Shown here one piece after another: positions 6,134-63,531 of a stretch of 63,531 nucleotides of DNA. Below the pieces are notes generated by a model, which worked only from the letters and a program-made list of their open reading frames with translations, made no database searches and was not told the DNA's origin. A program made the position numbers and the translations under genes. The stretch lies in the NCBI RefSeq assembly GCF_000315625.1, contig NW_005434621.1:392246-455776 (forward strand), given 5' to 3'. Position 1 is the first letter of the stretch. Each line of letters starts with the position of its first letter. This DNA is from Guillardia theta CCMP2712 (taxonomy: Eukaryota; Protista; Cryptophyta).

Positions 6134-9100
6134 ATGGCACTGGACAGTCCAGAAACATCCATCGCAGCAGCCGCTGATTTCACACCTCAGCCCGACTATG
6201 CGGTCCTTGCTCGACCCGTCTCAACTCTCACCTCTCCGTCATTCAGCTTTCATTCTCTACTAATGTACAAGTCTCCAGCGCTGTTAACTCTCCCCAGCTC
6301 TCCTCCTCCTCGACCCCGCTACGTCCTCCTGCTAATCTACAAACTGCGAAGCTGTCAAGGAGGTCAACTGCCCAGCTCACTCTGACCTTGCTCGACACGG
6401 TGTCAACGAGGACATCCAGGACTTGATGCTGACCAGCTGGGAGTCAGGTGGAGGGTTGCTGGGGGGCGGGGACTGAACTCACCACTTCCTCCTCGATCCC
6501 TCGGATGTGGAGGTGCGAGCAAGAGTCCTGCTGCTGCGTCAGGCTGTGCGGAGCGACGAGCCGGCTGACCTCTTCCAGAGCCTGTCGAGGGCCATTTGGA
6601 CAAGTCTGAAGTCGGACCTTAGGAGACAAGTCAGGAGGGAGGAGGAGGAGGAGGAGGAGGATTGGAACCGAGTCTTCTTCCTGCCGCTCCTCTACCTTCT
6701 CCTGCTCGTATGCTCCTGGGTGTCTACGCAGCAGATTGAAGGCTCGAGAAGAAAGCTCGCTGCAAGAAGAGCTCGGTCGAAACAAACGGAGGAGAGGAGG
6801 AGGAGGAGGAGGAGGAGGAGGAGGAGGAGGAGGAGGAGGAGGAGGAGGAGGAGGAGGAGGAGGAGGAGGAGAGCCCAAACACAGAAGGAGCAGCAGGAAC
6901 AAGAGGATAACTTCAGCTGGAGGAGCAGGAGGGACGGTACGAGGTAGCGCATGTTTGCTGTCCCACCTTGTGACTTTTGGAATCGACCGGATGCCCTTCT
7001 GTGTGTATGTGAAACTTCGCGTCCCCACCTTGACGATGGTGCCGGCGACAGTGGCATCCTCTGAGCCCCTGCCCTCAGCCTTTCACCTCTTACATTGTAC
7101 TGGAATCGAGAGAAACGAGACCTTGACCCGTGGGGGTCGGGCAGTACAACGTCCACCACTCGGTCCGCCCATCGGTGAAGCATCCTTCCTGCCTGAAGGC
7201 AAAGAGCACGATAAGGTGCTGGAGGAGGAGAGAGAAAGGAGGAGGAGGAGGGAGAGGGAGAGGACAGGGATGAGCAAGGAAAGAGAAGAAGTGAGCAGGA
7301 GGAGAGAGGAAGAAGCACCTTGAACGAGGATACGATGATCCCATCCCTTCCCACCTGAGCAGCACGCAAGCTCAGCATCCCACAACCCGCACGCTCACTG
7401 AGCCTGAAGGAGAAGATTTGCGGAGAAGACGAAGACAGGCAAGGCGTCCTTGCTGTCTATCGATGGCTGAAGGAAACGTATCAGCTGCCATAGTGCGAGG
7501 AACGGTGAAGATACTTGGCTTCCAACCTCCCGAAGCTGCCTCAGGTGGTCGGTACTCAAGACGCTCTGGCGGGGCTCATCAGGGATGAGAGGAGATCTCG
7601 TAAGATTACATTGACGGACTGTCGAGCATTCTCAAGGTTCAAGACGACCGCTGTCGGAGCCCCTCGGACGCCCTGAGACAGTTGTGCTAGGAGCCTGAGA
7701 TGGTGAAACACTGAGTGTGAGAACGGGAGGGGAAAAGACAAGGAAGGAGGAAGAGAAGGGCAGGAAAAGAGCGGACCAACGGAGAGAAAACAAGTGAGGA
7801 GGAAGAGCAGGAGGCAAAGGAGAAGGAGGGGGAGAAGTAGAATACTTCTTCAAGTGCGTTGGTGAGCACCATATGAAGACGACCGTCGAGCGAGTCAGCT
7901 GCAAGCTCGCGTTGGCAAACGCCTGATCAAAGGCCGATCACGCCCTTGCCATCACCGCGACGAGTCACCTTGGAAGTTTGAAAGACATACACAGACACTC
8001 CTCCGATGCTTGTCACCGTCAAGTAGGAGCCGGTCGCTACCATCCTGCAGGAGGAGATTCAGAGTGGCAGGAGATCTCACGTGCAGGTCTGACTTGAAGG
8101 ACGAGACTGTGAAGGTCAAGGACCTGGCACCCAAGGCTCAACGAGAGGAAAAGCGTCACAGGGAGCACCTCAGCACGTACTGCCAGATCGCCATCGAGAC
8201 GGAGTAGGAGTGAAGGTACGCGTTCTCGACGAGGAGAGATGAAACTGCCAGCACAAGTCACCACGACTGCACCCCACCCCCCCCCACACACCCTCTAACA
8301 AAATTCTCACTCACCTCGCAGAACCGCCTTGCTCGTCGTCAGGGCATAACGCGCCATGGACCTGCACATCGGATCTCTGCGGCTGTCCGCAGACATCAGA
8401 GTCGTCACCTCAGGGCCCGCGGGATCGTCTTAGTGATGTGATGCTGCAGGTGGCTGGAATGACGTCATGACATCGGTACCCCAACATGGGCCTCACCGCA
8501 AGAGAAACTTTGAAGATCGGATCACAAACTTCACAAAAATCTTGCCCAATCTGCAAGGAGTCTTCAAACACTCTGTCTCTCTTTGTCCCTCTGTGTGGTG
8601 CATACTGTCTGCCGACGCGGAGGACAACCAAGCACTGCCTGTAAGCAGTTTGCACAGCCTTGGAAGAAAGTCTGTACCCTGACTACTCGCCGTGACAACA
8701 TCACTGCGATGAAACAAGCCTTGTGTCATTCTCAATCACTCACCTGTACAAATGACTTCGACGCCCGCACTCCGGATCTCAAGGCTCTGCCCCTGAAAAT
8801 CTTTCAACGACAGCCGACAAGTCACGACAGTCTTCACCCTCGTCTCGCACTCTTAGCGATGCCTCTGCATAGACTTCAGAAACCCTCATCGCAGGTGACA
8901 AGGAAGGACCTGCTGATGGGTCTTGCATACCTCTCCCATGCTCCTCTCACGCGCCCACGTGCTGCTGAAGTGAGTTCTCCTGTTCGTTGAAGGCTGTAGT
9001 GGGCAACTTGTCCTAGAGGATGGTGATCTCTTGCAATCACGTCGAAAAGCGCTCACCGCTCTTGACGATGGCAACGGCTCCGAGGACAACAGGGAACGGA

Positions 9101-54011: not shown

Positions 54012-56310
54012 TCACGGTCTCCTCTCGGTGTCGAAAACTTGCTGTTTCGCTTCGATAAAGTTCACATCATCCGCCACCTCCTCGTCCACCACCTCGTCCT
54101 CCTCGTCCACCACCTCGTCATCCTCGTCCACCACCTCGTCCTCCTCGTCCACCACCTCGTCCTCCTCGTCCACCACCTCCTTTTCCTCGTCCTCAACCGC
54201 CACCTCCTCGTCCACCTCCTCAACCTCCTCCTCAAATACACCACCATTATCATCACCCCTCTTCGTGTACTAATAAGCGTAGGCCGCCATCTTCGCTCTT
54301 CGTTTCTCTTGAGCTCATTCGAGACTCAGCGGCTCCTCCCAACTTCCCGTCGCTCCTCCCTGCGAGAAGTAGTCGAGCAAGTTGGTCTGTCCCGACGAGC
54401 CGCCTGCCTTGATTGTCAGCTCCTTCCCCCCTCCTCTCCCTCACCGAGAGTGATGCTTTCGCCCCCGAAGTTCCCGACGCCCTGCCCGTCCAGCGCGTTC
54501 CCGACAACGTTGAGTTTTTTTTCGATGCACTGAGGTTGAGGTGAGGGAGATGAAAGAAGAGCAAGAGAAGAGCAGAGCAAAGGAGAGGAGCAGATGAGGA
54601 CAGGAGGCTCACCGGCCACATGATATCATCAACGCTTCCCTTTGCAAGCATGTAGTGGATGTTCACTGAGTACTGCTGTCCTATCCTGTGCACTCGATCC
54701 TCAGCCTGCATCATCACTCCTGGAGTCCAATGAAGCTCCGCAAACACCACTGCGTTGGCTGCCGTGAAAGTCAGCCCGGTCCCCGCCGCTGTCACCGACA
54801 GCACAGCAGCGCTTATGTCAGGGTCCTTCTGGAACGCGTCGACCAGCCTCGCTCGCTCGCTCATGCTCGTGCTCCGTCGATGCGGATGCTCTTCGTCCTG
54901 GCCAGCTTGAGAGCGTTCTCGATCCCGTCCAACACCTCGATGTGATGCCCGAACACCAGGAACTTGCCTCCTCCATCAACCATGGTCGCGAGGTACTCCT
55001 TCACTGCCGCCAGCTTCTCTGCTCCCGTCTCCTTGTACAGCTGATTCATGAGCAGCTGTGCCAGCCCCTTGGCGTTCTTCCTCTCCTCGGGTGCCGCTCG
55101 GTTGTTCATAACGATTGCGTTCAGGCTCTGCATCTCCTCCAGCTTCTTCTTGAACGCAGCGTTCGCCTCCTTGGACGTCTGCACCCAGATCTGCTGCCGC
55201 CGCTTGCTGGGCAGCTGGGTGAGAACCTCTGACTTGAGGCGTCGGATCATCACGTCGTTGAGGAGGCACCGGAGCTCCGACAGGTTGGAGGCTCCCGAGG
55301 CGTCGAGGGCCCACCGGCCAGGCTTCGCGTCGCAGTAGCGATAGGCAAACTCGTTCCAACTGCCAAAGAGCTTCGGGCGCAAGGAAGAGATTTGCGTGTA
55401 GAGCTCGGAGGGGCGGGAGAGAGCTGGCGTGCCCGTGAGGAGGATTGCTCTCCTCACCTTGCGGATCAGAGGAAGAATCGCCTTGGTGCGCTTTGCGGAG
55501 GACGACTTGAGGAAGTGACTCTCGTCAGCTATGAGCACATTAATACTCATCTTCGAGAGCTCCTCCGTGAATTTAAGGAAGAGATCGTATGAGATGATGG
55601 TAATCTTACCGCCCATCTGATCTTTTCCTGCTGCCATGTCAGTACGAGTCAAACACGACACGCTCCTCACCTGACATGATGACATTCACGTCTTCGTGAT
55701 CGACGTCCTTGAGCCATTTCATGAGCTCCTGCAGAGCGCGTGAGTGGCCGAGGACAAGCCAAGGGGAGAAAGTGACCTGCTTCCACACGAGTCTGAGAGG
55801 GGATGGGGTCACGATCAGCAGCGGCCATTCTTTCTCGTAGTACTTGGCGATGGCGATGGCTTGTACGGTCTTGCCCAATCCCATCTCGTCCCCTATCAGC
55901 GCCCGACCCCCATGCCGGATGGCGAACGCGATCCCCTCGCGCTGAAACGGCAGAAGCCCGGCGAGCAAGTCAGGAGGCAGAGCTTGCCAGATATGCTCGA
56001 GGGAGACCATCTCAGAGCTCACGGCAGAGCTCTGACTCTCAAGCTCTCTGAGGGCCTTGAGGAAGGTCGCAGGCAGCGGCTTCACACTTACATTGCTGCA
56101 CTTGCTCAGACTGCTGACAAGCTCATCGTGCTCGGAGACATGAAAACTCCACTCGCGAGATTGAGGGTTGTAACTCCTTGTCTTCATCTCCTTGAAGATG
56201 TTGATCACTTTAGGGTTGTAAGCGCACCTTGCCGTCATCTGACTGTCTCCTGTCATGTTGAGAGTAACCTGGAAAGATGGTCCTGTCTGCTCCTGTGGCT
56301 GCTGCTGCTG

Positions 56311-56344
<34 letters not shown>

Positions 56345-56468
56345 GGCTGATGCTGCTGCTGCTGTTGCTGCTCCTGCTGCTGCTCCTGCTGCTGTGGCTG
56401 CTGCTGTTGTGGCTGATGCTGCTCGTGCTGCTGCTCGTAATGATGTTGCTTCTGTAGCTGGTGGTATG

Positions 56469-56520
<52 letters not shown>

Positions 56521-57057
56521 GTGCTGTTGCTGTTGCTGTTGCTGCAAGAGGATCGGTCTGTTCTGGTGATTTATCATCGATTGTGACGGGAGATTGTTTT
56601 GCATGTGTGTGAGATCGCCATGGTTTCTCTGTTGCTGTAAGTGCAATGGCCTGATGGGAGAGTTGGAAGCAGCATGTTGAAGATGACTGGCATCAGCTCC
56701 TCTCGACCGCGCGTTATATTCTTCATGGTCAGCCTCCTCCAGCAAGTTCCCTCCACGATAGACTGTCGGCAACTCTGAAGGCGATTTGTGGGATGTACAA
56801 GGGGAGGAAATGTTTGATGTGGAGGAAGCGAGCGGAGAGGAGGGGATGTGGCTGGGTCTCCTCAGGCCTTCAGACCTCAAGCTGGTATGTGCCATGCTCC
56901 CTGCGGATGAGAACAAAGACTCGGAGGGCTCGTCTCTCGTAGAAGAATCTCTAACGCTGTGATGATTGACATGGCTGGAGCCTTTGAATCTTTTTGCCTG
57001 ATTTAGTGCCAACTCAATGGCTGCCATTTCTTCCGCATCGACGAACTCAAGCTCCAT
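54012..57057 (-). CDS. SMARCAL1: SMARCAL1/HARP-like SNF2-family annealing helicase (one HARP domain; apparent 1-nt frameshift in the assembly)
   Basis: HARP domain [26 protein letters not shown]; [86 protein letters not shown]. The 3' end is uncertain. Confidence 0.9.
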
Positions 57058-57790
57058 GGAGACTGAGTATGATAAAACTTGGAATTTCCTCTATATTGCA
57101 ACGAAAGAAATCTGACTACCTTAACTTTCCCAAAAGTCCGAGCAACTGTTTTGATTGTTTTGGATTGCTTTTTCTGCTGCCTTCACGTCAAGATTCTCTA
57201 CGCGTTGAAACCTTACTGCCAACATCTGTGCATACATGCGAATGGAGGGAAGCATCAACAAGCACCCTCCGCATAAACGCCTCTTTCCTCTCTACTCTCT
57301 CCGGAAGTTTCACTGATCTCACTGCCTTCCCTTTACCACTCACCCTTCCCGTCTATCTTCTACACGTCTCTATCCTCTACACGTCTCTATCCTCTATCCT
57401 TGTCTCTCCTCATCTACCTCGCACCTCCCATCTTTCTAGCCGCGCCATTTTGCCCGTATTCGCCGTTACCACCCGTTACACGAAACGTGCTTTTACCAAA
57501 GCTCTAATCAATTTTTTCGGCGCACTAAAACAGATAGATTTCGAAATTTTAAAAGTATGTATGGTGCACTGACAAAAAAGTTGCAAAATTTTAATGATTG
57601 ACAGTGCAACCTGCAATGTACCGGTACTATCCAGCCCATTGGATGGGCAGGAGTGGGTGGTACTGCATTCACAACGTTATTTTGTCAAAATAATTGTGCA
57701 AAGCGCACTCCAAGGTAGCACCACGCAATAATGCTGACTCATGGTGACATTGAGTAAACATTTTTGTATCGAACCAGAACTGCCCGAAAA

Positions 57791-60560
57791 ATGCAATCCA
57801 GCAGAGCAAATGATGCCATGTTGCAGGAGCGACAACGACGACAAGAAAGGGCATTTGACCTGATAGAGAACAAAGTCATCGCTGATAGTACAAAGAAAGT
57901 TTACCGATGCAAGATCAATAGGATCGTGCGTCTGTTACTCAAAGTGAACCCCAGGGCTGTCGACGAGGACGGCGAATTGATACTCCCAATGGCATGGAAA
58001 GATTTGAAGAGTTTGTTTGGAGACCTTGTCACCAATACTGACTTACCAAAATCTAGAAGGAGAAGAGGAGGTCAAGAGCAGGAAGAGCAGGAAGAGCAGG
58101 AAGAGCAGGAAGAGCAGGAAGAGCAGGAAGAGCAGGAAGAGCAGGAAGAGCAGGAAGAGCAGGAAGAGCAGGAAGAGCAGGAAGAGCAGGAAGAGCAGGA
58201 AGAGCAGGAAGATCAGGAAGAGCAGGAAGATCAGGAAGATCAGGAAGACGACGATCAGGAAGACGAAGATCAGGAAGACGACGGAGATCATGAGGATGAG
58301 GAAGAGCAGCAAGATGATCCGCATAACGTACACGAGGGTGAGAACGAGGACATTTCAGGATACCAGGCAAGCAAGAGAACGCTGTCGTTAGGAGCACTGC
58401 AGGGGTACAAGAGTGCGTTGAAAGCATATTACAGAGACAGAAATGTAGCTTTTGACGCGACTGGAATGCCATCGGGCAGTACTTTAAACGACCGGCTCAG
58501 TCGACTCATCAAAGGTTATGGAAGGGTGGTTACTCAAAAGAAATCCACGGGAGTGATGAAATTGAAAGAAGGCAAAAGTGTCTTGGCAGTGAGAGAGTAT
58601 GGAATTATTTGTGAAAAGATGACCCAGATACGTTCAGACACTATGGCACGAGAAATAGGATCAACAGGCTTGTTCGGATTTGCTGGTACCACGATCATGT
58701 GGAACTGTTGCTGTAGAAGCGAAACTTTAGACATTCTACATCTTGAACACTTTGATTGGGAGAACGACTGCTTGAAGCTGACAATATTGAAGACCAAGAT
58801 GGACCAAGGGGGTGTTGACGCCGACATTTTTTCTCCCAGAACAAGGCACATATTTGCAGCACCCAACAAACCTATGTCTTGTCCTATCTTGGCCATTGCT
58901 TTGTATGCGTTTTCCCAAACCAGAATGAGGATAAGTCACACCAAATTTTTTCTGGGAAACGACCAGAAGCAGAGGTTTGGCCAAGTCTTGAGAAGGGTAT
59001 TGTCCACAGAGGACATGCAGGAGGAAGTATGGAGGGATGTTGGTAAGTGCTAGCCTGAGGAAGTCTTGAGACTGAGATTGAAATGTGCAGGTTCGCACAG
59101 TTTTAGGAAGGGGAGCGTGACGCATCTACTAGGCATTCCGGGAGGACCAGTCAGTACATCAATATTTCAACGAGCCAGCTGGTCCTTAGGCAACACCAAG
59201 GACAGGTACATCGGAACAGTGGAACCAGGCAATGATCAATACTGTGGGCGTATTCTAGCAGGGAACAACACCAAGAGCGAGAATTTCGATGTGTTACCTC
59301 CTCATTTCACAAGAGAAGGTCTGGCAAGAATCAACGATATTGGTATGCACAAGTTCATTGATGGATACGACACGTTCCCGGACAGCTACAAGAGATGTTT
59401 ACCAATGTTCCTTGCGCAGATAGTGTACCATCTGGACCGTCTCAAAGACATGTTTCCAAGTCACCACTTCCTATGGGGGTCACCTGTTTTTGCAGTGAAA
59501 GGCTCAAGAACAATGCAATTTTTACAAGAATTGAAAGAGCATCATATCAGTGTTTGTCGCGGGGAATGCGAAGAATGCGGTATGACCTGCAGTGGAGTTC
59601 CGATGCACGTGATGAATGTGGCTGAAATCAGGAAGCTGCGAGAGAGTCAAGAACAGGGAACAAAGCTGTTGCACGATACAGTGTTGAATGTTTCAACTTC
59701 GCTACCGCAAGACATTTACGAGCTGATCATTAGAAACTTTGAGGTGAACGGAGCCATTCCACTAGCTCAACGAGATCTGGAAAAGCTGCGGGAGGATCTG
59801 ACATCCATGATGAATACAGGATTCAGTGAAATCATGCAAGGACTTCTGACGTCGAGACTCAGGATGCAGGGTCCTGAGGAACTGACAGGGAGAGGGGGTG
59901 GAGGGGAACTGCCANNNNNNNNNNNNNNNNNNNNNNNNNNNNNNNNNNNNNNNNNNNNNNNNNNNNNNNNNNNNNNNNNNNNNNNNNNNNNNNNNNNNNN
60001 NNNNNNNNNNNNNNGGACAGGCATACTGATTGAAGGCGAAACGTTTACATGGGGGGGGATGCAACATCCTGTACCTCAAGGTTTATTTCCCTCAGAAGAC
60101 GCCGTGCAAAAGTATGTGGCAGAAATGGCACCTAGGGCAAGAGGAGAAGATTAATGGAGAATGGAAGCGTATTGGTCCACTCAAACGTTTGGAAGGAACA
60201 GATCTAGTATGTGCCAACATGAAGAAGAACCTTTGCAAAGCAAAAGCAGTCATGTTGGCCATCGAGGTAATGGGCAGAAGACTTGCAAATTTGAGTACTG
60301 ATATTGGGATCGACCATGAGAACTATTCAGAGTGCTTCAATCATGGTTACGTTGAACTTGTCAAGGAGAAGTATGGACCGAATGCATGGAAAAAACAGAG
60401 AAAAAGATTCACCGAGCTTTCATACACGACTATGTACAAAAGGTTATGTCGGAGCAACACAGGCCGAAAGAACAAGAGGAAGAGGAATGCGGTTGCCAAC
60501 CGTGACGAAGGTGTACGACGGTGCGTGTGGACATGTTACATTGCAATGGACAGTGACTGA
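57791..60560 (+). CDS. Crypton tyrosine recombinase with C-terminal putative DNA-binding (GCR1_C-like) region; frameshift near 60082
   Basis: LQGYKSALKAYY (core-binding region), WNCCCRSE (R), KTKMDQGG (K), intron 59043-59090 giving DVG|SHSFRKG (HxxR), RASWSLG (W), KDRYI (Y), DQYCGRILAG, LPPHF, FTWGG...MWQKWHLG. Confidence 0.85.
58072..58250 (+). repeat. 9-bp coding tandem repeat (CAGGAAGAG)n encoding QEE/QED
   Basis: Direct tandem repeat inside the YR ORF. Confidence 0.95.
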
Positions 60561-61083
60561 CTTTGTGTAGGGTAAGAAGAATTGACGCTGCTCGAAGCCT
60601 GACCCAACAGACTCATTCTCCACTTCATTCAGACGTTGACATGGAGAGCAGCGATTGACATGCAATAGCCTACCGGACTGTAAGATGACTTACAACCAAG
60701 TCAGTGTAATATTGGTATAAACTGCGCAGATGTGTTTGCATACAACGATTATGTCTCACCCGCCTTTCACCATTTTTTCGGCTAAGTCACATACAACTTG
60801 ATTATAAAGAATAATCCAGTACTGATTTGTACCAGTTTTGGAAAACACTCATCATGATTTGTACCGTCCTGAAATGTGTTCCTTGTACCAATCTTTGTAC
60901 CAAAATATTTAGTCAATATCTTTAAAACTAGTGCTATAAGCTGTGCACTCACAACAAGGTCTGTTTAGTTTCTAGGGTGTAGGTTTTTCTCTACCACGAT
61001 CTCAGCTGAGCAACTCAGACTGGCAGTGCAGCCTCCACTCGCTGCTCACGACGCCATCGCGCCTCTCTACCAGCCACATGCAC

Positions 61084-63531
61084 TCAAGCTTGCTTGTCCC
61101 GAGAGAGGAAGAAGGACGTGAAAGCCAGCTGAGCCTGCTGCTTCATCCAGGACTGATCGCCAAAGCGGTAGTCACAACCTTGAGGCTTGTTGGGAGGCAC
61201 AAAATCCTCCTCCTTGATGGGATAGAGCACAACGCGCACGTCATCCCTGGAAGGAAAGATGCTGAACAAGTAATCGACTTCATGATTGTAGCACGAGCTG
61301 ACGAGACACTGCGAGCAGAAACTGCCGAGGATGAGCGTCGACTTGGCAGGCAAGAACACTGAGATCATGGAGGCAGCTCCTCCTGGAGAAACTAACAGGA
61401 AGGAGCGAGAGACCATCTCAACCTGCTCAGCAAAAGCCAGGAGGCTCAGATCATGTAGCAACACCCTTGTCGAAGCATTGCCAAGGGCATCTTGCACAGA
61501 ACCTCTGACTTGTTCCATGTTGGTGACCCTTTTTCGCAGACCAGGCTTCTTCAAGATGATCAGAGCATGGTACGTCTCACTCCCTGTACGAGAGAACGAA
61601 TGNNNNNNNNNNNNNNNNNNNNNNNNNNNNNNNNNNNNNNNNNNNNNNNNNNNNNNNNNNNNNNNNNNNNNNNNNNNNNNNNNNNNNNNNNNNNNNNNNN
61701 NNNNNNNNNNNNNNNNNNNNNNNNNNNNNNNNNNNNNNNNNNNNNNNNNNNNNNNNNNNNNNNNNNNNNNNNNNNNNNNNNNNNNNNNNNNNNNNNNNNN
61801 NNNNNNNNNNNNNNNNNNNNNNNNNNNNNNNNNNNNNNNNNNNNNNNNNNNNNNNNNNNNNNNNNNNNNNNNNNNNNNNNNNNNNNNNNNNNNNNNNNNN
61901 NNNNNNNNNNNNNNNNNNNNNNNNNNNNNNNNNNNNNNNNNNNNNNNNNNNNNNNNNNNNNNNNNNNNNNNNNNNNNNNNNNNNNNNNNNNNNNNNNNNN
62001 NNNNNNNNNNNNNNNNNNNNNNNNNNNNNNNNNNNNNNNNNNNNNNNNNNNNNNNNNNNNNNNNNNNNNNNNNNNNNNNNNNNNNNNNNNNNNNNNNNNN
62101 NNNNNNNNNNNNNNNNNNNNNNNNNNNNNNNNNNNNNNNNNNNNNNNNNNNNNNNNNNNNNNNNNNNNNNNNNNNNNNNNNNNNNNNNNNNNNNNNNNNN
62201 NNNNNNNNNNNNNNNNNNNNNNNNNNNNNNNNNNNNNNNNNNNNNNNNNNNNNCCATACTTGCAGTTGGAGGAGATCAGAGTCTCGAAGCACACGGGATG
62301 TCGCATCGCCTTGACATAGATCACTGACTTGGCGAGCTCCGGCAAGATGCGTTGGCTCATCCTGTCACAATCAGCAGCTGAGTACTCGAACAGACTCGCT
62401 CCGTCATCGCAAAGGTCGTCAACGACGATGTTTTCTGGAAGCGAGACATTTGGTATCATTGTGTACAAGGAGATGAAGGCAGGAACAATGGAATCCAAAA
62501 GAAAGTGCCCGAAGTTCCCGGCTGAGTATCTGCGCAGGAAGATGGAGGGCCCCGGAACCCACTGAGATCGACGAGGAAGCGTCAGCGAGGTCTCACTCTC
62601 CACTACCCACGCGTGCCTCTCGTCCGAGTCGTCGCAGCGACCTAGTCCAGCCCCCACGAACTGTGCGTCCTCACCCGCGTACATCACGTAGCGTCCGTGC
62701 ACGTGACAGACCTGCGAGGCAGCACAAGAGCTTGTCTGCCATGCCGACGGTCCTCTCTCGCACTCCCAGCCTGCTGCATGCCCAGGAAGACTCCAGGACC
62801 CCGAGGCTTGGTCCAAGACCCGCGACTGCCAGAAGCGAACGGCATAGAAAGCCTGTAGCTCGGCGACGTCTGCAGGCTCAGGAGAATCCTCGAGCTGGTT
62901 GAGCGAGGGCTTGTCAAATATTGCTTCCAGCTCCTCCACATTGCTGGGGTCGACAGGGACTCTCCTCTTGTGCAAGTAGATTGACATCCACTGATCTCCT
63001 GCTCGCCTCGCTGGAAACGCGATAGGAAACGCGCGGAGCTGAGCGAGGACATGTCTGCGCATGAGCAACCCGAAACGACCAGCAACCATCCCCCCGCTCG
63101 AGTTGCGCTGCAAGTGTCGGTGCCGATTCTGAAGGACCAGGGAAGAAGGGGAGACGTCGGAGAGCATGCGGCCGATCAGTGTCGGGTGAAACTCTTGCTC
63201 GTCATCCGTGAAGAAGATCCATGCATCGTCATAGGCTGATGCTGTCGCTTCGAGACTCGTCAGGTACCGCGCCGGAGCTCCGACGTCCTCTCCCCATGTG
63301 ACAGAGATGTTGCGTTCCTTGCTCAACCCGCCGTCGTCATTCAGAGCTCCCCAGTCGGAGTAGACGCGGCTCAAGCACACGAAGACATGCAGTACTTGAG
63401 GGGCGAGCGAGCGAGCGACTCGTCGGCACTGACCTGACGCGACCCGTGGAGGGATGCAGGCAATGCTTGCGACCACTCGAGGAGGCGCACAAGAGAAAGA
63501 GCCCTCCATGCCTGCCGTCACCACCAGAAAC
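61084..63531 (-). CDS. Glycosyltransferase: GT-A-like N-terminal domain fused to a GT61/DUF563-like domain; probably 5'-partial and spans an N gap
   Basis: GT61-like NFGHFLLDSIVPAF, PVCFETL, RKRVTNMEQV, LLAFAEQVEMVSRSFLLVSPGGAASMISVFLP. The upstream domain has DVGAPARYL...WIFFTDDEQEF. Confidence 0.65.

What the first reader, a model, noticed from the sequence alone, without database searches (positions are those of the whole stretch)
57564..60960. Crypton tyrosine-recombinase transposon with an intact catalytic set in a cryptophyte-like genome
Seen: after removing a 48-nt intron (59043-59090, which contains an in-frame TAG), the ORFs give a full YR signature: R (CCRSE), K (KTKMDQ), HxxR (HSFRK), W (RASW) and Y (DRYI), followed by DQYCGRILAG, LPPHF and an FxWGG...MWxxWxxG C-terminal region. 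Codon usage and GC are clearly lower than in neighbouring genes. Established: Cryptons are intron-containing YR-only DNA transposons thought to move via circular intermediates; these downstream motifs resemble CryptonS of oomycetes and diatoms. Inference: this is a poorly documented lineage occurrence, possibly horizontally acquired, and a candidate eukaryotic site-specific recombinase.
Basis: partly seen in the sequence, partly recalled or inferred. Interest (0 to 1): 0.8.

Follow-up and report, generated by a model that had tools for sequence, protein, structure and literature searches.

The report
Expressed Crypton-type recombinase transposon copy
This is a roughly 3.4 kb mobile-DNA copy, in a Guillardia-like algal genome, whose only gene is a complete tyrosine recombinase that is transcribed and spliced; it is a known kind of element (Crypton), but this copy looks recently active.

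Summary
Contigs from three public runs show the 100-N gap is really 13 bases and in frame. They also show that two T's are missing from the window after 60081 and 60085. With these fixes and two RNA-confirmed introns (48 and 50 nt), the gene is one 894-aa ORF carrying R309, K336, H420, R423, W448 and Y457.

- **Fold:** a close homologue's core gives a confident tyrosine-recombinase model (Z 13-15 to Xer, Flp, Ndc10, Cre).
- **Family:** it is large, with 1613 representative clusters. No Pfam family reaches its threshold. The nearest structural neighbours of both the core and the C-terminal domain are oomycete and diatom proteins. Motif blocks match the published CryptonS alignment best.
- **Mobility:** DNA depth is 2-10 times the flank. 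The repeated unit ends at 60967-60976, where it runs into at least four other flanks. The element is low in GC (GC3 0.49 against 0.55-0.87 in host ORFs). No reverse transcriptase or viral gene lies beside it.

Not established: the 5' end, the target site, any circular form, a phylogeny with Repbase Cryptons, and horizontal transfer. Unchecked first-reader notes of this scan list about ten other Crypton-like genes elsewhere in this genome.

Verdict: a new member of a known kind, of moderate interest.

The parts
57548..57581 (+). Left copy of an imperfect direct repeat (candidate left recombination site). It contains TATGG at 57560-57564. The 5' end of the element is inferred to lie at about 57500-57565.
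   Evidence: Local alignment to 60921-60960. GC falls to 0.29 at 57500-57599. Not verified with other copies.
57791..59042 (+). Exon 1: N-terminal region, acidic (EEQ)n tract, core-binding domain and the first half of the catalytic domain (R309 at 58715-58717; K334/K336 at 58790-58798).
   Evidence: ORF; homologues cover this region; invariant R and K in the 49-sequence alignment.
58074..58260 (+). In-frame tandem 9-nt repeat (GAAGAGCAG and variants) that encodes the acidic tract.
   Evidence: It is shorter and interrupted in the related copy L001.
59043..59090 (+). Intron 1: 48 nt, GT..AG, with an in-frame TAG.
   Evidence: Skipped in an X4 contig of depth 1424. The G. theta paralogue has an intron at the same codon. 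The intron is retained in the DNA contigs X1, X2 and L001.
59091..60520 (+). Exon 2: H420, R423, W448, Y457, the DQYCGR and LPPHF blocks, a predicted helical middle region and most of the C-terminal domain. It contains the assembly gap 59915-60014 (really 13 nt) and lacks one T after 60081 and one after 60085.
60521..60570 (+). Intron 2: 50 nt, GT..AG.
   Evidence: Skipped in one X4 contig and in 17 raw RNA reads of X29 from 9 start positions.
60571..60658 (+). Exon 3, with the stop codon TGA at 60656-60658.
60735..60745 (+). Polyadenylation site, at about 60740.
   Evidence: Ten X29 reads run into a stretch of A's behind 60740. RNA depth is concentrated at 60380-60795 with first mates on the + strand.
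60827..60901 (+). Four direct copies of TTGTACC within 75 nt (subterminal repeats; role unknown).
   Evidence: seven matches in the whole window against 1.75 expected, four of them here.
60921..60976 (+). Right copy of the imperfect direct repeat (60921-60960), followed by the 3' end of the repeated unit (60967-60976).
   Evidence: for the repeat; contigs of X1 and X2 leave the window at 60967, 60970, 60972 and 60976 into four different sequences, and depth falls from 380-615 to 59.7 in X2 and from 18-26 to 6.9 in X1.

Best explanation
The stretch from about 57.5 to 60.97 kb is one copy of a low-copy DNA transposon of the Crypton class, closest to the CryptonS type. It sits between two host genes of a Guillardia-like cryptophyte genome.

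Its only gene has three exons and encodes 894 aa. The protein has an N-terminal region, an acidic repeat, a core-binding domain, a Cre/Flp-like catalytic domain with a complete R-K-H-R-W-Y set, a predicted helical middle region, and a family-specific C-terminal domain of about 165 aa with no solved structural relative.

**Shown**
- The ORF is intact once the assembly errors are corrected.
- The gene is transcribed, spliced and polyadenylated.
- The core of the family has the tyrosine-recombinase fold.
- Several near-identical copies exist, with different 3' flanks.
- The two copies compared diverged under purifying selection.

**Inferred**
- The recombinase excises the element as a circle by recombining the two imperfect direct repeats at its ends.
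- It re-inserts the circle at sites that share a short stretch of identity, as Goodwin proposed for Cryptons.
- The C-terminal domain, and perhaps the TTGTACC repeats, help it recognise the element's own ends.
For: - **Gene model:**
- **Catalytic spacing:** R309, +27 to K336, +84 to H420, R423, +25 to W448, +9 to Y457. From my own knowledge, Cre has R173, K201, H289, R292, W315 and Y324.
- **Conservation:** R, K, R and Y are invariant and H is at least 90% conserved in 49 homologues.
- **Fold:** the AlphaFold model of homologue P0006:127-491 has pLDDT 86.6. Foldseek's top matches are Ndc10, Flp and Cre. VIA-align gives Z 13-15 to XerA, Flp, Ndc10, Cre and Tn1549 integrase.
- **Family size:** 1613 representative clusters at E<=1e-3 and 605 at E<=1e-10.
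- **Nearest neighbours:** oomycete and diatom clusters for the core (TM 0.77-0.79; feature score 0.96), and oomycete clusters for the C-terminal domain (TM 0.71 and 0.63).
- **Motif blocks:** W-x4-R, KT-xx-[DE]-QG, HSFR[KR]G and IF[QD]R[AG]SW match the published CryptonS rows.
- **Copy number and 3' end:**
- **Dead relatives:** copies with deletions in metagenome contigs L001-L004.
- **Selection:** window against L001 gives 14 synonymous, 4 non-synonymous and 2 intron changes.
- **Composition:** GC3 0.49 against 0.55-0.87 in host ORFs.
- **Ends:** imperfect direct repeats at both ends.
- **Viral contigs:** no relatives found in IMG/VR.
Against: - The 5' end was never seen in a second copy.
- No empty site and no circle junction was observed.
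- The 3' junctions do not stop at one base. They are nested at 60967, 60970, 60972 and 60976, so the exact terminus and crossover are unclear.
- Contig depth is only a rough proxy for copy number.
- No Pfam family reaches its threshold, and no solved structure matches by sequence.
- The fold model is of a 43-46%-identical homologue, not of the window protein itself, because the intron splits the domain.
- TATGG is not repeated at the 3' end.
- No phylogeny with Repbase Cryptons was possible.
Confidence: 0.75

Rival explanations
1. It is a domesticated, Crypton-derived host gene that belongs to a small gene family and is no longer mobile.
For: - The gene is strongly represented in RNA contigs: depth 1424 against about 7 for the downstream gene.
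- The intron position is shared with a 43%-identical G. theta paralogue.
- That paralogue (P0006) has Q in place of the catalytic H and a host-like GC of 0.555.
- P0005 and P0010 lack catalytic motifs.
- Substitutions between the two copies compared are mostly synonymous.
- Unchecked notes of this scan list 'dead-site' Crypton-like genes elsewhere in this genome.
Against: - This copy keeps every catalytic residue.
- It is multi-copy at near identity, with at least four other 3' flanks in addition to the window's own.
- Its GC3 of 0.49 is far below that of host genes.
- Related copies are decaying through deletions.
- It carries about 550 nt of non-coding ends, with a direct repeat at each end.
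Confidence: 0.12
2. It is the integrase module, or a remnant, of a larger element such as a polinton-like virus or virophage with a tyrosine recombinase, or a DIRS/Ngaro retroelement.
For: Cryptophyte polinton-like viruses often carry tyrosine recombinases (PMC12220804). An unchecked note of this scan says that a virus and a Crypton share a terminus elsewhere in this genome.
Against: - The low-GC island is only about 3.4 kb and is bounded by host genes at 57057 and 61084.
- The repeated unit ends at 60967-60976.
- There is no reverse-transcriptase or capsid ORF.
- Homologues sit as solitary genes, or as a tandem pair, among host genes in L006 and L007.
- The scan of IMG/VR found no relatives.
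Confidence: 0.05
3. The extra depth and the alternative flanks come from segmental duplication or from differences between haplotypes or strains, not from transposition.
For: Depth ratios differ between runs, about 2-4 times in X1 and 5-10 times in X2. The junctions are nested rather than at a single base.
Against: Four unrelated continuations begin within 10 bases of each other, exactly where GC jumps from 0.36 to 0.60. The unit is the size of known Cryptons (2.8-5.9 kb). The encoded enzyme is a recombinase.
Confidence: 0.05

Closest known systems
CryptonS elements of oomycetes and the diatom Phaeodactylum (Kojima & Jurka 2011, PMC3212892)
   Same: - A tyrosine recombinase is the only protein, and the gene contains introns.
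- The length is about 3.4 kb, within the published range of 2.8-5.9 kb.
- There is no GCR1_C domain, but there is a conserved C-terminal region.
- It is low-copy.
- The ends are direct repeats, not inverted ones.
- The motif blocks W-x4-R, KT-xx-[DE]-QG, HSFR[KR]G and IF[QD]R[AG]SW resemble the published CryptonS rows.
- The nearest predicted-structure clusters are from oomycetes and diatoms.
   Different: - The host is a cryptophyte-like alga, not a stramenopile.
- The W-to-Y spacing is 9, against 11 in the published CryptonS rows.
- TATGG occurs only at the presumed 5' end.
- The end repeats are about 34-40 bp and imperfect, not 5-6 bp.
- Membership was not tested by phylogeny.
CryptonF elements and their derivatives Ndc10/Cbf2 (Pfam NDC10_II, GCR1_C)
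   Same: They share the fold: Ndc10 is the top Foldseek match and gives Z 13-14.6. NDC10_II gives weak sub-threshold hits in 6 of 49 homologues.
   Different: No member reaches the NDC10_II threshold and there is no GCR1_C hit. The C-terminal domain matches a GCR1_C-containing cluster only weakly (TM 0.45).
Cre, Flp, Xer and lambda-type site-specific recombinases
   Same: The two-domain fold is the same, and so are the order and spacing of the R-K-H-R-W-Y residues.
   Different: There is no detectable sequence similarity. This protein has about 400 extra residues (a predicted helical middle region plus the C-terminal domain), comes from a eukaryote and has introns.
Guillardia theta hypothetical protein GUITHDRAFT_113076 (XP_005827789, P0006)
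   Same: It is 43% identical over 775 aligned residues, has the same domain order, and has its first intron at the same codon.
   Different: It has Q at the catalytic H position and a host-like GC of 0.555. It looks like an old or domesticated copy.

Membership tests
Crypton (tyrosine-recombinase-only DNA transposon) | Encodes a tyrosine recombinase with the R-H-R-Y tetrad | tested here: met
   R309, H420, R423 and Y457, plus K336 and W448. A family member has the recombinase fold, Z 13-15.
Crypton (tyrosine-recombinase-only DNA transposon) | No reverse transcriptase, DDE transposase or viral genes within the element | tested here: met
   There is one gene in the 3.4-kb island, and host genes begin at 57057 and 61084.
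Crypton (tyrosine-recombinase-only DNA transposon) | Repeated in the genome, with copies at different sites | tested here: met
   Depth is 2-10 times that of the flank, and four other 3' flanks are seen in X1 and X2. Diverged and deleted copies are L001-L004. The 5' side was not examined.
Crypton (tyrosine-recombinase-only DNA transposon) | No terminal inverted repeats; short direct repeats at both ends | tested here: inconclusive
   No terminal inverted repeat was found. An imperfect direct repeat of 34-40 bp lies at both ends. The exact crossover and the 5' terminus are not defined.
Crypton (tyrosine-recombinase-only DNA transposon) | Moves through a circular intermediate | not testable with these tools
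   The one reads call was used on 58300-61400, so no junction between the two ends could be sought.
CryptonS | No GCR1_C domain, but a C-terminal region conserved within the group | tested here: inconclusive
   There is no GCR1_C hit. The C-terminal domain is conserved in 86 of the 170 fetched proteins, and its nearest Atlas clusters are from oomycetes. I could not show that those oomycete proteins are CryptonS.
CryptonS | 5-6 bp terminal direct repeats, TATGG in most families | tested here: not met
   TATGG is at 57560-57564 only. None occurs in 60900-61000. Published exceptions exist (TTACTG, TAATG, CTGTAAG).
CryptonS | Recombinase clusters with CryptonS in a phylogeny | not tested
Only a comparison of motif blocks by eye with Additional file 4 was made.
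CryptonF (NDC10_II / GCR1_C) | Pfam NDC10_II and GCR1_C domains | tested here: not met
   The only hits are sub-threshold NDC10_II matches (best E 0.034) in 6 of 49 homologues.
CryptonA (DUF3504) | Pfam DUF3504 | tested here: not met
   2 of 49 homologues, at E 0.15 or weaker.
DIRS/Ngaro retroelements | Reverse transcriptase and RNase H next to the recombinase | tested here: not met

The most novel reading that the evidence does not exclude
The element is currently active. Its two imperfect end repeats of about 35-40 bp, perhaps together with the four TTGTACC repeats as accessory binding sites, would be the natural recombination sites of a eukaryotic, intron-containing, Cre-like recombinase. 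That enzyme carries a DNA-recognition domain of unknown fold. If so, this would be the first Crypton whose excision and integration could be reconstituted.
Probability: 0.3. Interest if true: 0.65.

Novelty: new member of a known kind. Interest (0 to 1): 0.45.

Why it matters
Crypton movement has never been shown experimentally. [quoted passage not shown]

This copy has an intact ORF, a spliced and polyadenylated mRNA, near-identical sister copies, a mapped 3' end and candidate end sites. That makes it a practical starting point for testing the circle model and for defining a eukaryote-native site-specific recombinase.

It also shows that the CryptonS-like family, including its uncharacterised C-terminal domain, reaches into cryptophytes. 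In Guillardia theta a paralogue with a substituted catalytic histidine exists; the notes of this scan list more such genes in this genome.

Tried and rejected
- **Pfam on the four ORF pieces:** only noise.
- **Word-index protein searches:** three near-identical fragments, one relative, and four hits with a profile swamped by low-complexity words.
- **PDB sequence-profile search:** nothing.
- **JGI metagenome scans:** two scans found no relatives, and one alignment was too diverse to use.
- **IMG/VR scan:** nothing.
- **Partial N-terminal product:** a guess at how it would be called on short-read contigs was not on record.
- **Naming the host:** exact look-up of five long ORFs failed, and the Atlas search on the neighbouring helicase was uninformative for taxonomy.
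- **Project PRJEB17505:** not found in the papers.
- **Weak match of L003's 3' part to the window's 5' end:** I judged this to be chance in AT-rich sequence.
- **C-terminal domain against the PDB:** no credible fold match (best Z 4.4).
Full report
**1. What is in the sequence**

On the + strand, an ORF from ATG 57791 runs to 59042. A 48-nt GT..AG intron (59043-59090, with an in-frame TAG) follows, and the frame resumes at 59091.

The program's warning about the gap was tested first. Contigs of three public runs replace the 100 N (59915-60014) with 13 letters, ATTATTGACGACA. These keep the frame (..GGGGELP-IIDDR-TGILIEGETFTWGG..). The runs are:
- X1: 2011, the likely source of the assembly.
- X2: a DNA run of 2021.
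- X4: a run of 2014 whose contigs are spliced, so it is RNA.

An independent, related copy in an ENA metagenome contig (L001) also has 13 letters there.

In the window as assembled, FTWGG and MWQKW lie in different frames. All three runs, and also L001 and L003, have one more T in each of two T runs, behind 60081 and behind 60085. The frameshift is therefore an assembly error.

A second intron, 60521-60570 (50 nt, GT..AG), is skipped in one X4 contig and in 17 raw RNA-seq reads of X29 from 9 start positions. Ten X29 reads end in poly(A) behind 60740.

With these read-supported corrections the coding sequence is 2685 nt, giving 894 aa with no internal stop. The stop codon is at 60656-60658.

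**2. What the protein is**

Sequence libraries do not name it. Pfam gives nothing at threshold, either for the window pieces or for 49 homologues. Sub-threshold hits go to NDC10_II (6 of 49) and DUF3504 (2 of 49), both of which are Crypton-derived recombinase families. A profile of the family finds no solved structure by sequence.

An exhaustive HMMER search with exon 2 finds a large family: 1613 representative clusters at E<=1e-3 and 605 at E<=1e-10. The best named hits are from the cryptophytes Hanusia phi (49% identity) and Guillardia theta (XP_005827789, 46%). Members of another cluster come from chrysophytes.

In a 49-sequence alignment of the core, the R, K, second R and Y are invariant and the H is at least 90% conserved. 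The window protein has R309, K336 (K334 is also possible), H420, R423, W448 and Y457. From my own knowledge, this spacing is nearly that of Cre (R173, K201, H289, R292, W315, Y324).

Because the intron splits the catalytic domain, I folded the G. theta homologue's core (P0006:127-491) with that alignment. The results were:
- Model quality: pLDDT 86.6, pTM 0.78.
- Foldseek: the top matches are Ndc10, Flp and Cre.
- VIA-align: Z 13-15 to XerA, Flp, Ndc10, XerH, Tn1549 integrase and Cre, with nothing else in the list.

The C-terminal domain of about 165 aa (FxWGG...W..W..G) was folded from P0003, taken from a contig carrying a copy about 94% identical in this part of the gene, with 32 homologues. 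The model is confident (pLDDT 87.3) but has no credible solved relative (best Z 4.4). 86 of the 170 proteins fetched by then share this domain.

**3. Which kind of recombinase element**

Kojima & Jurka (PMC3212892) define CryptonS as oomycete and diatom elements with these features:
- length 2.8-5.9 kb;
- no GCR1_C domain;
- a conserved C-terminal region;
- 5-6 bp terminal direct repeats, mostly TATGG.

Their Additional file 4 prints CryptonS recombinase domains. Compared by eye, four blocks of the window protein match CryptonS rows better than CryptonF or CryptonA rows:

| Window | CryptonS rows |
|---|---|
| W-x4-R (MWNCCCRSE) | LMWYxFGRASD |
| LKTKMDQG | RVKTSEEQG |
| HSFRKG | HSFRRG |
| IFQRASW | IFDRGSW |

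The W-to-Y distance differs, 9 here against 11 in CryptonS.

In the ESM Atlas the nearest clusters to the core are an oomycete 'core-binding domain' cluster (TM 0.77) and diatom proteins of about 905-915 aa (TM 0.79). Bacterial integrases score about 0.5. The feature search also puts oomycete clusters first (0.96 and 0.95). The C-terminal domain's nearest clusters are again from oomycetes (TM 0.71 and 0.63).

These are leads, not a phylogeny. I call the element CryptonS-like and leave formal membership open.

**4. Is it a mobile element?**

The evidence from the reads and the window is as follows.
- Word depth of the DNA contigs inside the element is 316-615 in X2, apart from the gap bins, against 59.7 in the right flank. 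In X1 it is 13-26 against 6.9.
- Contigs leave the window at 60967, 60970, 60972 and 60976 into four unrelated sequences. Two of these are already present in the source-like run X1, alongside the window's own flank.
- GC jumps from 0.36 to 0.60 at that point. On the left it falls to 0.29 at 57500-57599.
- The element's GC3 is 0.49, against 0.55-0.87 for seven host ORFs.
- The flanking genes are host genes: a HARP/SNF2-like helicase ending at 57057 and a gene from 61084 whose own 49-nt intron is seen in RNA.
- There is no reverse transcriptase or viral ORF, and IMG/VR holds no relative.
- Related copies in metagenome contigs are 88-98% identical and carry deletions.
- Between the window and L001, the 20 differences are 14 synonymous, 4 non-synonymous and 2 in the intron. 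The lineage therefore evolved under protein-level selection before L001 decayed.
- There is no second copy in the window.

The two ends share an imperfect direct repeat, 57548-57581 against 60921-60960. It has exact blocks TTTAAAA and GTGCACT. This extends the 18-bp repeat noted by another first-stage note on this same stretch (s1-431815).

Four TTGTACC repeats lie just inside the right end.

The 5' end itself could not be checked.

**5. Host**

The source is hidden, but three lines of evidence point to Guillardia theta or a close relative.
- The closest homologues are from cryptophytes.
- The G. theta paralogue has introns of 51 and 47 nt, and its first intron sits at the very codon of the window's intron 1.
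- The tetranucleotide profile of the window's host part correlates at r = 0.95 with a 14.5-kb G. theta locus. The two halves of the window correlate at 0.94, and another eukaryotic contig gives 0.74.

The shared intron position, and the existence of old paralogues with host-like GC, speak against recent horizontal arrival. Low GC alone does not show horizontal transfer.

**6. Mechanism**

By analogy with Goodwin's model for Cryptons and with Cre, Flp and Tn1549, the recombinase would synapse the two end repeats. It would exchange strands through a 3'-phosphotyrosine at Y457 and release a circle. The circle would then integrate at sites sharing a short identity. This is inferred, not shown. The nested 3' junctions (GTT, GTTTC and GTTTCTAGG shared with some flanks) would fit microhomology at targets, but they are not proof.

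**7. Verdict**

This is a coding-intact, expressed copy of a low-copy Crypton-type element in a lineage where I found no open description. Repbase was not checked. It is a new member of a known kind. Its interest is moderate, mainly as a candidate active Crypton.

Unchecked first-reader notes of this scan list about ten other Crypton-like genes elsewhere in this genome.

Noticed in passing
window 59915-60014 and 60081-60088: Assembly errors. The 100-N gap stands for only 13 bases, and two T's are missing from two homopolymer runs 65-70 nt after the gap. Gene models built on this scaffold will be wrong here.
   Followed up: yes
window 60382 and 60659: Contigs of X1, X2 and the RNA-like run X4 leave the element behind 60382 into a GC-rich sequence (AACCCGACTCATCCCGCC...). 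Another X2 contig leaves behind 60659. At least one truncated or rearranged copy therefore exists, and it also appears in RNA.
   Followed up: no
window 60714-60787: One X2 contig (depth 77.6) replaces 72 nt of the 3' untranslated region with 18 other letters. This is a variant copy of the element.
   Followed up: no
L006 6001-8483 (Guillardia theta JH993028.1): The paralogue GUITHDRAFT_113076 has Q in place of the catalytic H, a host-like GC of 0.555 and two introns of 51 and 47 nt, the first at the same codon as in the window. It looks like an old or domesticated Crypton-derived gene.
   Followed up: partly
L007 8001-13675: In a 28.7-kb ENA metagenome contig, two homologous recombinase genes lie in tandem with a 3380-bp period (62-nt repeat at 8058 and 11438, 81% identical). 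This is about the length of the window's element, and is what integration into an existing copy, or of a dimeric circle, would give.
   Followed up: no
L005 160-1056: A 57%-identical homologue on a JGI contig of 3115 nt, which has the length of a transcript, carries an extra cysteine-rich, zinc-finger-like N-terminus. Its frame breaks between the two halves of the protein.
   Followed up: no
window 55639-57057 (- strand): The neighbouring host gene encodes a HARP/SNF2-type helicase with a very long glutamine-rich tract. The window as a whole is full of GAG/CTC and CAG/CTG trinucleotide arrays.
   Followed up: no
runs X15, X18, X19: Runs labelled freshwater or lake metagenomes hold 19-63% of the element's sampled words, although the genome looks like that of the marine alga Guillardia. 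Either the labels are loose or a close freshwater relative carries the element.
   Followed up: no
window 61270-61318: A 49-nt GT..AG intron of the downstream minus-strand gene is skipped in an X4 contig. Host introns here are the same tiny size as the element's.
   Followed up: partly
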